A DNA stretch of 62,882 nt, filler included, from Octopus bimaculoides (lineage: Eukaryota): the NCBI RefSeq assembly GCF_001194135.2. It is 6 parts of 5 records of this genome, joined end to end, with 100 filler letters (N's around TTAATTAATTAA, not from the genome) between each part and the next. Parts side by side here need not be neighbours in the genome. Positions count along the whole stretch, not along the records: positions 33,230 to 50,573 come from NC_068995.1; 5 more parts are not named here. The stretch is one strand, 5' to 3'. Numbering within the stretch: position 1 is the stretch's first letter; every line of letters begins with the position of its first letter. The position numbers and the translations under genes are program-made. Under the pieces are notes generated by a model. That model saw only the letters and a list, made by a program, of their open reading frames with translations. It was not told where the DNA came from and made no database searches. Shown piece by piece: positions 43,550 to 49,463 of this stretch.

Positions 43550-43680
43550 TGAATGTTCTTTACGTGGCCAGTATGTTGTCTGGACGAGGTTTTGGCAGTA
43601 CCATCGGCTTACTGAATGGTGAAGTTATTGCTACCTGGCACACCGGAAGAAACCAGATGAATTTAATGACGAGAAACCAG
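43550..43680 (+). CDS. PAL: PAL exon 8: (M)NVLYVASMLSGRGFGSTIGLLNGEVIATWHTGRNQMNLMTRNQ
   Basis: Acceptor ctcttttattccacag|TG; donor CAG|gtgagt; phases fit both neighbours. Confidence 0.85.
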
Positions 43681-43844
43681 GTGAGTTTAATCACATACAT
43701 ATACACGAACTCGTACAATCTTGCTCCCCTCCACCAACAATTTCTCAGAATACTTGTCTATCCCATACACCCGCATTATCCCAAAACGAAAAACAAAACC
43801 AGGATGTTCTTTAATTTTTGTCTCCTGCCATTCTTCTTTTCCAG

Positions 43845-43952
43845 AACAACAAAGCTATGCCCCACGACATTGCTGTTGCACCGAACGGACGTGCGGTCTA
43901 CGTCACGGACATACTCAACGAAGACAACCCACTATTCAAACTCCAGTATTAA
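43845..43952 (+). CDS. PAL: PAL terminal exon: NNKAMPHDIAVAPNGRAVYVTDILNEDNPLFKLQY*
   Basis: Acceptor ttcttcttttccag|AAC; MPHD motif (third Zn His and Ca-binding Asp); TAA at 43950-43952. Confidence 0.92.
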   Translation, partial: NNKAMPHDIAVAPNGRAVYVTDILNEDNPLFKLQY

Positions 43953-44116
43953 TGAATGACGCCATTTTAATTTTGGGGTTAATTCATCATTGGTTGGATT
44001 TAGTTACTAATTAGATTACTATTAATTTAGAAGTTAATTATAGTTCTGATCTCTACCTGTACCTTATCGGGTGAGAGAAAGAGAAGTAATAATGGCAGTG
44101 ATGGGGAAACAATATA

Positions 44117-44130
44117 AATAAAGAAATAAA
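44117..44130 (+). promoter_or_regulatory. Candidate polyadenylation signals for PAL
   Basis: Two AATAAA hexamers (44117-44122, 44125-44130) about 165 nt after the stop; the background is AT-rich, so the evidence is weak. Confidence 0.3.
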
Positions 44131-44156
44131 AATGTCTATCTTTTGCAATGCATAGG

Positions 44157-44209
<53 letters not shown>

Positions 44210-45313
44210 NNNNNNNNNNNNNNNNNNNNNNNNNNNNNNNNNNNNNNNNNNNNNNNNNNNNNNNNNNNNNNNNNNNNNNNNNNNNNNNNNNNNNNNNNNN
44301 NNNNNNNNNNNNNNNNNNNNNNNNNNNNNNNNNNNNNNNNNNNNNNNNNNNNNNNNNNNNNNNNNNNNNNNNNNNNNNNNNNNNNNNNNNNNNNNNNNNN
44401 NNNNNNNNNNNNNNNNNNNNNNNNNNNNNNNNNNNNNNNNNNNNNNNNNNNNNNNNNNNNNNNNNNNNNNNNNNNNNNNNNNNNNNNNNNNNNNNNNNNN
44501 NNNNNNNNNNNNNNNNNNNNNNNNNNNNNNNNNNNNNNNNNNNNNNNNNNNNNNNNNNNNNNNNNNNNNNNNNNNNNNNNNNNNNNNNNNNNNNNNNNNN
44601 NNNNNNNNNNNNNNNNNNNNNNNNNNNNNNNNNNNNNNNNNNNNNNNNNNNNNNNNNNNNNNNNNNNNNNNNNNNNNNNNNNNNNNNNNNNNNNNNNNNN
44701 NNNNNNNNNNNNNNNNNNNNNNNNNNNNNNNNNNNNNNNNNNNNNNNNNNNNNNNNNNNNNNNNNNNNNNNNNNNNNNNNNNNNNNNNNNNNNNNNNNNN
44801 NNNNNNNNNNNNNNNNNNNNNNNNNNNNNNNNNNNNNNNNNNNNNNNNNNNNNNNNNNNNNNNNNNNNNNNNNNNNNNNNNNNNNNNNNATATATATATA
44901 TATATATATACAATATGCATATGTATGATCTGTATCCGATATTCCACCGATATAATTATTGATAAAATTATATTTATTTTTATAAATCATATTTTTAATT
45001 TGCATAGGTCCCCCTCTTCTTTTCTCCTTCTCCTTCGACAGTATTTGTTTTTATGTATGTGTATTTTGAATTAAATATATACACATATTCTATAAATATT
45101 CCCGTATACGCATTCATATATGTGTGGTTCAATGGTTGTAACAACATCATTAGCACTTTCAACTATATTGGTGTTAAATTTAACTAATAATCCACTCCAT
45201 GTGATCACTGTATATATATCTATGATAATATTAAAGAGAATATTATATGTTTTATATAGCATATATATCATATATATTATATACATGTCTTATACAATAT
45301 TATGTTATATACA

Positions 45314-46172
45314 CAGGGTGGGTGAAAAGTAAGTAGGCATTAAAAATTGTTAATAAAATCCATATTCCTTTTAAAAATTTATTGAAACAAATGATACATG
45401 TTCTTTATTACATCTGAAAATAAAAGTAAATCTTCGTATTTCAACGTAAGCAACGGTGGCATCAACCAGTTTCCCCAAACGGCCAGGGATGGAATGAACA
45501 ACCTTCTGAAGGGCGTCGTCTGGGATATCATTGAGGACCTCCGGAATCCGAGTTTCCAAGTCCTCCAGTGTGCGAGGTTTTGTCTTGTACACCTCATCTT
45601 TTGTGTAACCCCTCAGGTAAAAACCACATGGAGTGAGATCTGGCCTTCTTGAAGTTCTGGACTTCTGCGGTGACAGTCTTCAGGTTTTAGCTCCGACATG
45701 TAATGGGTTTTCCACGGACGAAGATTCAATTCTTTATGAAACACCGTACGTATTGTGTGTCTTGTTAATCCACTTTCACGAGCTGCCGAACGTGTTGATT
45801 TTTGCGGGCTACGATTAAACCTTTCCTGTACTGTTGCCACGTTCTTCACTGACCACTTCTTCTTGCATCGTTCATAGAGCCCGTGGTCATCAGCTTTGCA
45901 TGACAACTTCTCATTGTCTCCGGACATAGTGTTGCATGCTTACATTTCCATGCACGCCACCATCTCTGAACCAAAACAATAGAATTCCATACTTCATAGC
46001 CCACTCCTGAACAGTCAAGCGACCGACCATCTGGAAACTAAGAAAAAAGACAATAAGAAAATAAGAAATTCCATTAGTGTTGTCTGTTTAAAGAATGTTT
46101 TCGTTATGACTTCAGATGTACTAAAAGTTCTATAAGCAATTTCTAAGGCCTAGTTACTTTCCACTCACCCTG
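45314..46172 (-). mobile_element. Tc1/mariner DNA transposon, internally deleted
   Basis: TIRs cagggtgggtgaaaagtaagtaggc / gcctagttactttccactcaccctg followed by TA. Minus strand encodes an HTH part (RFNRSPQKSTRSAARESGLTRHTIRTVFHKELNLRPWK) fused to PDLTPCGFYLRGYTKDEVYKTKPRTLEDLETRI; the catalytic centre is deleted. Confidence 0.9.
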
Positions 46173-47072
46173 TATATTACGTATTACACTTTGTTACATA
46201 TATACCATTATGTATTACAGTTACACGATGAATATATACATATAATGTTATATATAATGCACACACTCACATACATACGTACATACATACATACATACAT
46301 GCATACATATATGTATCATAAACTTATGCGTATATATATTCCATATATATATCAATTTATATATTATATTGTATAAAAATGATATACATATCTATAGTAT
46401 ATATATATTTATATTTATAGATATACATACATGCATGCATACATACATACATATCTACATATATATATATATATATACCTTATATTTTGCATATAATATA
46501 CTGAATTTTACTAATTAAGTATACAGAACAAGAACTGTTTCATTAACTAAGGCACTGTTTTCAAATATGATAATCCACTAACACCAATAGGCACCTAATC
46601 TTCCACATCCTCTCTGTACACCAAATCTCACATTTATATATATATATATATATATATNNNNNNNNNNNNNNNNNNNNNNNNNNNNNNNNNNNNNNNNNNN
46701 NNNNNNNNNNNNNNNNNNNNNNNNNNNNNNNNNNNNNNNNNNNNNNNNNNNNNNNNNNNNNNNNNNNNNNNNNNNNNNNNNNNNNNNNNNNNNNNNNNNN
46801 NNNNNNNNNNNNNNNNNNNNNNNNNNNNNNNNNNNNNNNNNNNNNNNNNNNNNNNNNNNNNNNNNNNNNNNNNNNNNNNNNNNNNNNNNNNNNNNNNNNN
46901 NNNNNNNNNNNNNNNNNNNNNNNNNNNNNNNNNNNNNNNNNNNNNNNNNNNNNNNNNNNNNNNNNNNNNNNNNNNNNNNNNNNNNNNNNNNNNNNNNNNN
47001 NNNNNGCGTTTATTTGCAACTTTCATCTACCTGTCTCATTAAAAGATGTTTTTCAGCACATATAAACTTCGG

Positions 47073-47120
<48 letters not shown>

Positions 47121-47125
47121 TACTA

Positions 47126-47335
47126 TAAAGGTGGCGAGCTGGCATAATCGTTAACACGCTGGAGGAAATGCTTAGCGGCATTTTGCCTGTCGCTACGTTC
47201 TGAGTTCAAATTCCGCCGAGGTCGACTTTGCCTTTCATCCTTTCGGGGTCGATGAATTAAGTACCAGTTACGCAGTTGATATAATCGACTACCCCTTTCC
47301 CTAAAAATTTTCAAGGCCTTGTACCTCGACTAGAA
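47126..47335 (+). mobile_element. SINE family B copy
   Basis: aaggtggcgagctggcataatcgttaacacg..; follows (ATT)n. Another partial copy lies at 47704-47811. Confidence 0.8.
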
Positions 47336-47854
47336 ATAATAATAATAATAATAATAATTATTATTATTATTCTGTATTCACACCAAGTTCATATCTGCCT
47401 TTTTCTCCTTCTGATGTTGAAAAATATAAGTAAATACCCGTGATGAACTGGGATCATTTTCATTGAATGATCCCTGCCCCTGCCAGATTTTAGGCTTTGC
47501 GCATGCCCATGTATGATATTATTATCATTATTATGAACACAATGGGTTGGCAGAGTCAGTAAAATTTTGGACAACTACCTTGTGGTAATTGCTCCAGTGT
47601 TTGGCATTTTGAGCTGAAATCCCACCACGTCATTTGAATTTCTGACTTTTAGGGAATTGGATAACTAAAATTTGTAAAGGACCCTGCAAGATGTCTTCTG
47701 ACTAAGACGGCGAGCTGGCAGAATCGTTAGCACGCCGGACAAAATGCTTAGCGGCATTTCGTCCGTTTTTACATTCCTTGTTCAAATTCTGCCGAGGTCG
47801 ACTTTGCCTTTNNNNNNNNNNGCGGCCATGCTGATGCACCGTCAATATTTTTTT

Positions 47855-48575
47855 CATTATTTACATTTGACGGACATTTGTCCTCATCTTGTTTGTTGTT
47901 GACACAACGTTTCGGCTGATACACCCTCCAGTCTTCATCAGGTATCTTGGGGAAATTTCGAACCTGGGGTCTCATTCCTAAGGTATTTTTCGATGTATTA
48001 GTATTATTATTATTCAGATCACTACCTGGAATCGAACTCGGAATTTTGGGATTAGTAGCCCGTGCTCTTAACCACTACGCCATATGACCGCGGGTAATTA
48101 TGTAGTGAATTTTTAGAGCTTATAAATCTAATATTTTCTTATCCTTCCTTAATACCGGTTCCCATATGCTACTCATATCTGCACTCGGTCTGCTTAGGAG
48201 ATTGTTGTGAAGCAGCACATATGCAACCTCCTAAGCATACCGAGTGCAGATATGAATAGCATGTGGGAACCGGTATTAAGGAAGGATACGAAAATATTAG
48301 ATTTATAAACCCTAAAAATTCACTGCATAATTTCCCACTGGCATATGGCGTAGTGGTTAAGAGCACGGGCTATTAACTCCAAGATTCCGAGTTCGAGTCC
48401 AGGTAGTGACCTGAATAATAATAATAATAATAATAACATCGAAAAATACCTTAGAAATGAGAACCCAAGTTCGAAATTTTCCCCAAGACATCTAATGAAA
48501 GCGGGAGGGTATATCAACCAAAACGTGTTAACAGCAAACAAGATGAGGACAAATATCCGTCAAATGTAAATAATG
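47855..48575. repeat. ~720-bp imperfect palindrome made of two divergent tRNA-headed SINE-like units (family E)
   Basis: 47855-48204 is the reverse complement of 48224-48575, with a ~19-nt loop. Each arm has tggcgtagtggttaagagc (A box), gagttcga.tcc (B box), (AAT)n and a CTGATGA..GAAACGTT tail. A partial copy lies at about 34345-34420. Confidence 0.9.
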
Positions 48576-49069
48576 TAAATAATTCCTAATCTCTTAAATA
48601 TAGAACTGTAACAAAGACTATCACAAAGAAACGCCACTATCCTAAGTTGCCGCGCAGTGGGACCGAACCCGATACCATGTAATTGCGAAGCGAAATTCTC
48701 AACAACATCGCAATGCCTGNNNNNNNNNNNNNNNNNNNNNNNNNNNNNNNNNNNNNNNNNNNNNNNNNNNNNNNNNNNNNNNNNNNNNNNNNNNNNNNNN
48801 NNNNNNNNNNNNNNNNNNNNNNNNNNNNNNNNNNNNNNNNGAGAAAAAGAAAAAAAAAAAAGATGTCTAATATTGGACAGTTTCATTGGGTGATCTTTTA
48901 TTTTAGGTACATATATCAACTGGATTGATAAAAAATGCCTCAAAAACAGTTAGGGAAATTACTAAAAAGAAACATGGGTATCCCGAGTAAACGAAACGAA
49001 TAAGCAAACGTATTAAACATCATTAATTCGTCGTGGGAACAGCATATTTCGTTTTGCAACCATAATAAA

Positions 49070-49463
49070 CAGGGTGGGCGAACAGTAAGTAGGCATTAAA
49101 CATTGGTAATAAAATCTATATTACTTTTACAAATTTATTGAAAGAAATGATACATGTTCTTTATTACATGGGAAAATGAAAGTAAATCTTCATATTTTAC
49201 CGTAAGCAACGGTGGCATCAACTAGTTTCCTCAAACGGCCAGGGATGGAATGGACAACCTTCTGAAGGACGTTGACTGGGATATCATTGAGTACCTCCTG
49301 AATCCGCGTCTCCAAGTCCTCCAATGTGCGTGGTTTTGTCTTGTACACCTCATCTTTTGTGTAACTCTTTAGGTGAAAATCACATGGAGTCAGATCTGAA
49401 TTGCAGTGATACTAAAAATTCTATAAGCAATTTCTAATGCCTAGTTACTTTTCATCCACCCTG
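49070..49463 (-). mobile_element. Shorter MITE-like derivative of the same Tc1/mariner family
   Basis: Same TIRs (cagggtgggcgaacagtaagtaggc / gcctagttacttttcatccaccctg, then TA); 49070-49404 aligns with 45314-45642. Confidence 0.9.

What the first reader, a model, noticed from the sequence alone, without database searches (positions are those of the whole stretch)
43648..43691. Duplicated PAL exon/intron boundary: a silent donor only A-to-G away from the real one (candidate RNA-editing-gated splice switch)
Seen: a 20-nt unit is repeated at a 24-nt period across the end of exon 8. Copy 1 is AGAAACCAG|ATGAATTTAAT (43648-43667) and copy 2 is AGAAACCAG|GTGAGTTTAAT (43672-43691). The only two differences are A in copy 1 versus G in copy 2, at donor positions +1 (43657) and +5 (43661). 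Using copy 2 adds 8 in-frame residues (MNLMTRNQ) just before the Zn/Ca-binding MPHD motif; the shorter form is closer to the spacing I recall for vertebrate PAL. Established: inosine is read as G by the spliceosome, and coleoid cephalopods edit neural transcripts very heavily via ADAR. Inference: editing A43657 (and A43661) would turn AU into a GU donor and remove the insert without a frameshift, giving two PAL isoforms. At minimum, this is a clear case of exon extension by boundary duplication and donor decay.
Basis: partly seen in the sequence, partly recalled or inferred. Interest (0 to 1): 0.72.

Follow-up and report, generated by a model that had tools for sequence, protein, structure and literature searches.

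The report
Duplicated splice donor lengthens octopus PAL exon
In the Octopus bimaculoides gene for the peptide-amidating lyase PAL, a 24-base duplication across an exon/intron boundary left a dead upstream splice donor and a live downstream one, so the enzyme carries 8 extra amino acids in a surface loop; it is a clean but ordinary case of exon extension, with no sign of the proposed RNA-editing switch.

Summary
Window 43648-43667 and 43672-43691 are a 24-nt-period tandem repeat that differs only at 43657 and 43661 (A in copy 1, G in copy 2). No such repeat appeared in 100 shuffles.

The window is Octopus bimaculoides, in a PAL-only gene (XP_014778505.1).

- **Transcript evidence:** an independently assembled contig (Logan SRR32601320_18877) matches all nine window exons exactly. 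It joins 43680 to 43845 and has A at both positions, so the long form with MNLMTRNQ is expressed.
- **Relatives:** O. vulgaris has one copy of the boundary (…AACATG|GTGAGTTTAATCACGAGA…). Argonauta and a cuttlefish-group PAL also lack the insert. The duplication is therefore specific to the O. bimaculoides lineage, and both A's are derived G>A changes in the copy that became exon.
- **Protein:** the insert falls in a low-confidence loop between two strands, just before the invariant His of MPHD. This loop varies in length across PALs.

The editing-gated switch has no support:

- A43657 follows a G.
- No unusual duplex was found.
- Neither the short isoform nor recoded forms are in the protein collection.

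Low-level editing cannot be excluded without read-level RNA-seq.

One bonus: Argonauta carries an independent 63-nt x4 in-frame duplication of the same donor.

The parts
43550..43680 (+). Penultimate coding exon of the PAL gene (8th exon in the piece, 9th of 10 in the mRNA). It encodes (M)NVLYVASMLSGRGFGSTIGLLNGEVIATWHTGRNQMNLMTRNQ.
   Evidence: Acceptor ccacag|TG and donor CAG|gtgagt. It matches L003 995-1125 exactly.
43648..43671 (+). Copy 1 of the 24-nt unit (AGAAACCAG ATGAATTTAATGACG). Formerly exon end plus intron start, it is now wholly exonic. Bases 43657-43680 encode the 8-residue insert MNLMTRNQ.
   Evidence: It is present in the mRNA contig L003 and absent as a second copy in O. vulgaris L004.
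43657..43661 (+). Dead donor. Position +1 (43657) and position +5 (43661) are A where copy 2, O. vulgaris and Argonauta have G.
   Evidence: U1 pairing is -1.7 kcal/mol against -12.2 for copy 2.
43672..43695 (+). Copy 2 of the unit (AGAAACCAG|GTGAGTTTAATCACA). It carries the donor actually used, at 43680|43681.
   Evidence: The junction 43680->43845 is in RNA contig L003 at 1125|1126 and in XP_014778505.1. It has the strongest U1 pairing in the gene.
43681..43844 (+). Last intron, 164 nt, GT...AG. Its first 14 nt and last ~150 nt are orthologous to the ~906-nt O. vulgaris intron.
43845..43952 (+). Last coding exon with its stop codon: NNKAMPHDIAVAPNGRAVYVTDILNEDNPLFKLQY*. The H of MPHD is invariant in 64 PALs. 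The 3' UTR continues to at least ~44200.
37930..43249 (+). Upstream PAL exons in the piece: 37930-38102, 38974-39034 (runs into N gap 39035-39767), 39922-39994, 40143-40282, 41308-41375, 42192-42270 and 43137-43249.
   Evidence: Splice sites and frames are. All match L003 exactly. The match to rat PAL 3fvz has E 1e-41.

Best explanation
The window is the 3' part of the Octopus bimaculoides gene for a soluble, monofunctional peptidyl-alpha-hydroxyglycine alpha-amidating lyase (PAL2-like).

In the O. bimaculoides lineage, a 24-nt segment spanning the last 9 nt of the penultimate exon and the first 15 nt of the intron (AGAAACCAG|GTGAGTTTAATCACG) was tandemly duplicated. The likely mechanism is slippage between two AGA triplets 24 nt apart; this is inferred.

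The duplication created two in-frame donors. The downstream copy kept the ancestral consensus and is the donor now used. The upstream copy, now inside the exon, acquired G>A at +1 and +5 and C>G at +12, and can no longer act as a donor.

The result is a fixed 24-nt exon extension: the exon/intron boundary has moved by one side. It adds MNLMTRNQ to a flexible, length-variable loop that leads into the strand carrying the invariant MPHD His.

- **Shown:** the repeat, its absence in relatives, the direction of the changes, use of the downstream donor in RNA, and the loop location in a confident model.
- **Inferred:** the slippage mechanism, the order of events, and that the insert is tolerated or near-neutral.
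For: **The repeat.** It is real and not due to chance.

**The gene.**
- The gene model has canonical sites and consistent phases.
- The window is identical to O. bimaculoides CM046615.1.
- XP_014778505.1 contains GRNQMNLMTRNQNNKAMPHD.

**The transcript.** Logan RNA contig SRR32601320_18877 is 100% identical to all nine exons. It has the junction 43680|43845 and A at 43657 and 43661.

**The relatives.**
- O. vulgaris genomic DNA has a single copy...GGAAGAAACATG|GTGAGTTTAATCACGAGATTAATT, and its protein reads GRNM|NNKAMPHD.
- Argonauta reads GRNQ|NTRAIPHD, with AGAAACCAG|GTAAGT.
- The Sepia-group PAL has the same short length.
- All three copy-1 substitutions are measured against a sequence shared by copy 2 and O. 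vulgaris.

**The protein.**
- The AlphaFold model has pLDDT 87.3 and pTM 0.85. The insert (residues 325-332) lies between strands 314-319 and 338-343, where pLDDT drops to 57.
- The best PDB match is rat PAL 3fvz, with TM 0.82.
- The W-to-H loop is 7-20 residues long across 64 PALs, and this one is the longest.
Against: - RNA support is one assembled contig (a consensus) plus a predicted RefSeq model, so minor isoforms would not be seen.
- Copy 1 and copy 2 differ at 3-4 of 24 positions, while the O. bimaculoides / O. vulgaris intron divergence is only ~9% pairwise. Either the duplication is about as old as that split, with a possible secondary loss in O. vulgaris, or copy 1 evolved fast.
- Only two other octopod genomes were available.
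- Nothing tests whether the insert affects enzyme activity.
Confidence: 0.88

Rival explanations
1. Editing-gated alternative 5' splice site. ADAR deaminates A43657, with or without A43661, in the pre-mRNA. AU then reads as a GU donor, and a short isoform without MNLMTRNQ is made in tissues with heavy editing.
For: - With I at +1, U1 pairing rises from -1.7 to -8.4 kcal/mol. With I at +1 and +5 it equals the used donor, at -12.2.
- The short form restores the ancestral loop length seen in O. vulgaris and Argonauta.
- Coleoids edit very heavily (PMC4384741).
- Editing can in principle create donor sites (PMC9105294).
- There is weak predicted pairing of 43655-43666 with 43811-43823, near the acceptor, with p about 0.2-0.26.
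Against: - A43657 is preceded by G, the most disfavoured ADAR 5' neighbour (established knowledge).
- No editing-complementary duplex stands out. The best is -18.9 kcal/mol, and 63% of control windows do as well or better.
- The RNA contig has A at both sites and uses the downstream donor.
- The exact short isoform and the V/S recoded long forms are absent from the protein collection, while the long form is present.
- An upstream donor edited only at +1 would compete with a stronger consensus donor 24 nt downstream.
- Two donor-killing changes look like silencing rather than conditional use.
Confidence: 0.04
2. Assembly artefact or rare allele. Under this view the second copy is a mis-join of overlapping contig ends or haplotypes in a gappy draft assembly.
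For: The piece comes from a draft assembly with seven N runs beside microsatellites. The v2 chromosome sequence is identical here and derives from the same contigs.
Against: - An RNA contig from a separate sequencing run contains all of copy 1 plus the exonic 9 nt of copy 2, base for base.
- There is no gap next to the repeat.
- The copies differ at 3-4 of 24 positions, far above allelic divergence.
Confidence: 0.02
3. Adaptive loop extension. The duplication is the same event as in the best explanation, but the 8-residue insert was selected because it changes access to the PAL active site. The upstream donor was then silenced by selection to fix the long form.
For: - The insert ends 4 residues before Met-Pro-His-Asp, whose His is invariant.
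- Two of the three substitutions in copy 1 hit the two key donor positions.
- Three changes fall in copy 1 against none in copy 2.
- Argonauta independently duplicated the same boundary.
Against: - The numbers are small. The expected number of neutral changes is about 1, so 3 gives P about 0.09 by my Poisson estimate.
- Copy 2 is constrained as a working donor, which alone explains the asymmetry.
- The loop is naturally variable in length and is modelled as disordered.
- About a fifth of the Argonauta locus is tandem repeat (my rough sum of the period >=10 arrays), so coincidence is plausible.
Confidence: 0.12

Closest known systems
Intron boundary shift ('intron sliding') or novel intron positions caused by tandem duplication of a splice-site-bearing segment (Lehmann et al. 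2010, PMC2891723; reviewed in PMC3488318)
   Same: A short regional tandem duplication containing a splice signal relocates an exon/intron boundary by less than 60 nt. The old position is abandoned in favour of the new one. It is detectable because close relatives keep the ancestral position.
   Different: Only the 5' boundary moves and the coding sequence grows by 8 codons, so this is exon extension rather than a frame-neutral slide of both ends. Both repeat copies are still recognisable, and the inactivating substitutions can be polarised with outgroups.
Short-distance tandem alternative 5' splice sites, for example KIT GNNK+/- with donors 12 nt apart (PMC12818652)
   Same: Two in-frame donor positions lie a few codons apart at the end of one exon. 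Choosing between them adds or removes a short peptide in an extracellular or luminal loop.
   Different: In KIT both sites are GU and both isoforms are observed and regulated. Here the upstream site is AU in the genome, and only the downstream junction is seen.
Splice sites created by A-to-I editing: ADAR2 auto-editing, where AA becomes AI and acts as a 3' acceptor (reviewed in PMC9105294)
   Same: A single A-to-I change would convert a non-site into a consensus splice site, giving a possible post-transcriptional switch.
   Different: The known cases have a defined dsRNA and a measured A>G signal. Here no structure, favourable context or edited read was found. It would also be a 5' donor (AU to IU), which has been proposed as a possibility rather than documented as a regulated case in the sources I read.
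Rat PAL catalytic core (PDB 3FVZ/3FW0) and monofunctional invertebrate PALs (Drosophila PAL2, scorpion PALm; PMC6669573)
   Same: Six-bladed NHL beta-propeller with invariant His, Tyr and Arg positions. It is soluble with a signal peptide and has no PHM or transmembrane domain.
   Different: It has the longest W-to-His loop of the 64 PALs compared: 20 residues against a median of 10.

Membership tests
Peptidyl-alpha-hydroxyglycine alpha-amidating lyase (PAL, EC 4.3.2.5) | Sequence homology to the PAL catalytic core across the domain | tested here: met
   The phmmer match to 3fvz has E 9.7e-42 over 223 residues. There are 1786 homologues, and the named ones among the 120 listed are almost all PAL/PAM.
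Peptidyl-alpha-hydroxyglycine alpha-amidating lyase (PAL, EC 4.3.2.5) | Six-bladed NHL beta-propeller fold | tested here: met
   The AlphaFold model has pLDDT 87.3 and pTM 0.85. Foldseek's top hit is 3fvz, with E 5e-28, TM 0.82 and rmsd 2.3.
Peptidyl-alpha-hydroxyglycine alpha-amidating lyase (PAL, EC 4.3.2.5) | Conserved metal-ligand and catalytic residues: three His, Tyr and Arg (rat H585, H690, H786, Y654, R533, R706; numbering from memory of Chufan et al. 2009) | tested here: met
   H136, H231, H339, Y203, R86 and R247 of P0123 are invariant in 64 PALs. The mapping to rat numbers is by motif (YLPHG, VPHS, MPHD, GYCNSR, FHRG, ADRE) and rests partly on my recollection.
Peptidyl-alpha-hydroxyglycine alpha-amidating lyase (PAL, EC 4.3.2.5) | Lyase activity on peptidyl-alpha-hydroxyglycine | not testable with these tools
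   This needs a recombinant enzyme assay.
Boundary shift / exon extension by tandem duplication of a splice site | Direct repeat spanning the exon/intron junction, with one copy now exonic | tested here: met
   Copy 1 is present in mature mRNA.
Boundary shift / exon extension by tandem duplication of a splice site | Orthologues retain the unduplicated boundary at the ancestral position | tested here: met
   O. vulgaris has a single copy. The Argonauta model and the Sepia-group protein have the short loop.
Boundary shift / exon extension by tandem duplication of a splice site | The old site is no longer a functional splice site | tested here: met
   There is AT instead of GT at 43657-43658 and A at +5. 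U1 pairing is -1.7 kcal/mol.
Tandem alternative 5' splice sites (KIT GNNK type) | Two canonical GU donors in frame | tested here: not met
   The upstream site is AU in the genome and in RNA.
Tandem alternative 5' splice sites (KIT GNNK type) | Both junctions observed in transcripts | tested here: inconclusive
   Only the long junction was found, in one contig plus the RefSeq model. The exact short protein is absent from the collection. No read-level data were available.
Editing-created splice site (ADAR-dependent) | The target A lies in a stable dsRNA with an editing-complementary sequence | tested here: not met
   No duplex stands out within 42837-44209. More distant partners beyond the N gaps could not be examined.
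Editing-created splice site (ADAR-dependent) | Favourable nearest-neighbour context (5' U or A, not G) | tested here: not met
   43656 is G. The preference itself is established knowledge. PMC4384741 states only that squid editing sites show neighbour preferences, as in other organisms.
Editing-created splice site (ADAR-dependent) | A>G mismatches at the site in RNA, and junction reads from the created site | tested here: inconclusive
   The consensus of one assembled contig shows A. Variant proteins are absent. Read-level counts are not possible with these tools.

The most novel reading that the evidence does not exclude
A43657, with or without A43661, might be edited at low or tissue-specific levels. 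Editing would re-create the ancestral donor and restore the ancestral-length PAL loop in a minor isoform. This would be 'restorative' editing acting on a splice site rather than a codon. A related reading is that this donor is a recurrent target of in-frame boundary duplication in octopods (24 nt x2 here, 63 nt x4 in Argonauta), which would give a natural series from multi-donor alternative splicing to fixed exon extension.
Probability: 0.05. Interest if true: 0.7.

Novelty: new member of a known kind. Interest (0 to 1): 0.27.

Why it matters
This is a fully polarised, base-resolved example of how a coding exon grows. The steps are a microhomology-flanked tandem duplication of a donor, retention of the downstream copy, and decay of the upstream one, and the result is visible in mRNA.

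Together with the independent 63-nt x4 array at the same donor in Argonauta, it shows an early stage and a late stage of the same process in one gene. That is useful as a teaching case and for annotation.

It also corrects the public O. bimaculoides protein model, which lacks 17 residues because of an assembly gap.

It does not open a new mechanism. The attractive editing-switch idea remains untested and, on sequence grounds, unlikely.

Tried and rejected
1. **Short-query homology searches.** The search for homologous proteins returned nothing for the 78-aa and 139-aa C-terminal queries, although close relatives exist, because the word prefilter fails on short queries. These two negatives are uninformative, and only the 334-aa query worked.
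2. **TRF on the window.** It did not report the 24-nt x2 repeat because the score was too low. The repeat finder and my own scan did.
3. **Shared ancestry with the Argonauta array.** I asked whether the window repeat is a remnant of the Argonauta-type 63-nt duplication with an internal deletion. I rejected this: the 6 nt after TTTA in copy 1 (ATGACG) match the intron continuation ATCACA/ATCACG at 4-5 of 6 positions, but the predicted deletion junction ATCGGA at only 2 of 6 (by eye).
4. **U12-type AT-AC or AT-AG splicing from 43656.** Rejected: ATGAAT is not the /ATATCC consensus, and the intron ends in AG.
5. **Search for an editing-complementary sequence** by partition-function folding of 42837-44209 and by RNAduplex against controls. 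Nothing stood out.
6. **Literature.** Liscovitch-Brauer 2017 (PMC5499236), which holds octopus editing-site tables, is not held. No paper links octopus PAL to editing.
7. **Rfam scan of the piece.** No matches.
8. **L004 in the Python sandbox.** The locus never appeared there, so the O. vulgaris comparisons were made with DNA alignment.

Full report
**1. The observation**

The sequence reads exactly as reported. Window 43648-43667 is AGAAACCAG|ATGAATTTAAT and 43672-43691 is AGAAACCAG|GTGAGTTTAAT. They differ only at 43657/43681 and 43661/43685, with A in copy 1 and G in copy 2.

- The repeat finder extends the pair to 23 nt at 87% identity with spacing 24.
- In the 14.6 kb of non-N sequence only three comparable near-tandem repeats exist.
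- None arose in 100 dinucleotide-preserving shuffles.
- Both candidate donor positions are phase 0. The downstream one adds MNLMTRNQ.

**2. The gene and the organism**

Nine + strand exons with canonical AG/GT sites and consistent phases encode a PAL domain. One of them runs into the N gap at 39035-39767.

- The match to rat PAL 3fvz has E 1e-41.
- The coding sequence stops at 43950-43952, right after the propeller. This is therefore a monofunctional, soluble PAL.
- The window is Octopus bimaculoides. The 44-nt repeat and its surroundings are identical in GCA_001194135.2 CM046615.1.
- XP_014778505.1 matches the window exons, including GRNQMNLMTRNQNNKAMPHD.

**3. Which donor is used**

The cluster of the best hit also holds a 367-aa protein from a Logan assembly of run SRR32601320.

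- Its 1481-nt contig (L003) is 100% identical to all nine window exons.
- It joins 43680 directly to 43845 (L003 1125|1126).
- It reads ...CCAGATGAATTTAATGACGAGAAACCAG|AACAAC..., with A at both 43657 and 43661.

The long form is therefore expressed. The duplicated segment is also confirmed by sequence independent of the genome assembly.

An exact-sequence look-up found the long protein. It did not find the hypothetical short isoform or the M>V, N>S or double recoded forms. This negative is weak, because only one full-length contig exists.

**4. Comparative evidence**

- **O. vulgaris.** The protein (CAI9733777.1) reads HTGRNM|NNKAMPHD. Its genomic boundary is single-copy: GGAAGAAACATG|GTGAGTTTAATCACGAGATTAATT.
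- **Argonauta hians.** It reads TTGRNQ|NTRAIPHD, with AGAAACCAG|GTAAGTCTT.
- **Acanthosepion/Sepia-group PAL.** It has the same short length.

The duplication is therefore specific to the O. bimaculoides lineage, and the ancestral intron began GTGAGTTTAATCACG followed by AGA. The duplicated unit starts with AGA, and the ancestral sequence just after it is also AGA. This is the signature of slippage at a 3-nt microhomology, which is an inference.

Against the sequence shared by copy 2 and O. vulgaris, all three substitutions lie in copy 1: G>A at +1, G>A at +5 and C>G at +12.

Exon 8 differs at 2 of 104 nt between the two Octopus species. The alignable ~145 nt at the 3' end of the intron differ by about 9%. 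Three changes in 24 nt on one lineage is more than the roughly one expected. That hints at selection to silence the upstream donor, or at a duplication about as old as the species split. The numbers are too small to decide (my Poisson estimate gives P about 0.09).

**5. The protein consequence**

- A model of the 367-aa long form, built from a 64-sequence alignment, is confident: pLDDT 87.3 and pTM 0.85.
- Its best PDB match is rat PAL 3fvz, with TM 0.82.
- The insert (M325-Q332) sits between strands 314-319 and 338-343. The 10-residue block 321-330 has mean pLDDT 57.
- It ends four residues before M337-P338-H339-D340, and H339 is invariant in all 64 PALs.
- From the structure paper of Chufan et al. 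2009, as I remember it, this His is a Zn ligand and the Asp a Ca ligand.
- The loop from the conserved Trp to this His is 7-20 residues in the 64 sequences, with a median of 10. It is 15 in gastropods and 17-18 in scallops. O. bimaculoides is the longest at 20, while O. vulgaris and Argonauta have 12.

An 8-residue addition to a naturally variable, flexible loop is plausibly tolerated. Whether it alters access to the active site is unknown.

**6. The editing-switch hypothesis**

It is chemically possible. Approximating I as G, U1 pairing of copy 1 goes from -1.7 kcal/mol (genomic) to -8.4 (I at +1) to -12.2 (I at +1 and +5). The working donors of this gene span -5.4 to -12.2. Editing can in principle create donors (PMC9105294), and coleoids edit massively (PMC4384741).

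Several points count against it:

- A43657 follows a G, the least favoured ADAR neighbour (established knowledge).
- Folding 42837-44209 gives at most a 0.26 pairing probability at 43657. The partner is a weak AU/GU helix at 43811-43823.
- The best duplex for 43640-43675 is -18.9 kcal/mol, which 63% of control windows equal or beat.
- The assembled mRNA shows A at both sites and the downstream junction.
- A donor edited only at +1 would have to out-compete a perfect consensus donor 24 nt downstream.

I put the switch at about 4%. Only read-level RNA-seq can settle it.

**7. Comparison with known kinds**

- The closest category is a boundary shift or novel intron position arising from tandem duplication of a splice-site-bearing segment (PMC2891723; PMC3488318).
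- It resembles tandem alternative 5' sites such as KIT GNNK+/- (PMC12818652) only in geometry, because one of its sites is dead.
- It is not a demonstrated member of the editing-created splice-site class.

My verdict is a new, unusually well-resolved member of a known kind, of modest interest.

**8. A bonus observation**

In Argonauta hians the orthologous donor sits in an independent tandem array at L001 24185-24439, with a 63-nt unit, 4.0 copies and 97% matches.

- Each copy keeps CAG|GTAAGT.
- 63 nt is 21 codons, and the read-through frame is open across all four copies.
- The deposited model uses the first donor.

Two of three octopod genomes therefore carry independent in-frame duplications of the same donor, at different stages. 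By my rough sum of the period >=10 arrays, about a fifth of the Argonauta locus is tandem repeat. Coincidence is therefore plausible, but the pair is worth a look with RNA-seq.

Noticed in passing
L001 24185-24439 (Argonauta hians BAAFZT010000042.1), orthologous to window ~43603-43692: An independent tandem array lies on the same exon/intron boundary: a 63-nt unit in 4.0 copies with 97% matches. Each copy has an intact CAG|GTAAGT donor. The frame stays open through all four copies, so downstream donors would add 21, 42 or 63 residues (VSLIGLLNGEIIANWTTGRNQ repeats). The deposited model uses the first donor.
   Followed up: partly
window 39035-39767 (N gap); L003 472-521: The RefSeq protein XP_014778505.1 (350 aa) lacks 17 residues (VTLSNSTGTEVSSFGANL region) because part of an exon lies in this assembly gap. 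The RNA contig supplies the missing 50 nt and gives a 367-aa protein.
   Followed up: yes
L004 45875-45877 and 45878-46783 (O. vulgaris OX597828.1): In O. vulgaris the last codon of the exon is ATG (Met), where O. bimaculoides (both copies) and Argonauta have CAG (Gln). The intron is ~906 nt against 164 nt in the window. The extra ~750 nt include GC-rich repeat-like sequence absent from O. bimaculoides.
   Followed up: partly
window 37387-37607, 37673-37791, 47075-47295, 47696-47811; also 34351-34420 / 48357-48426 and 45309-45608 / 49065-49364: There are dispersed repeat families at 81-91% identity in introns and downstream of the gene. One has a tRNA-like head (GGGCTACTAACCCCAAGATTCCGAGTTCGATTCC), so they are probably SINE-type elements. 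Rfam found no match at gathering threshold.
   Followed up: partly
window 43655-43666 with 43811-43823: There is weak predicted pairing (p about 0.2-0.26) between the dead-donor segment and the U-rich tract just upstream of the acceptor. This is the only candidate structure touching A43657, and it is AU/GU-rich with an internal loop.
   Followed up: partly
window 35870-36299, 39035-39767, 42468-42836, 44210-44889, 46658-47005, 47812-47821, 48720-48840: Seven N runs, mostly flanked by (TA)n, (CA)n or (ATAC)n microsatellites, make up 2691 of 17344 bases. They produce spurious 'repeats' in the repeat finder and limit any search for distant RNA partners.
   Followed up: no
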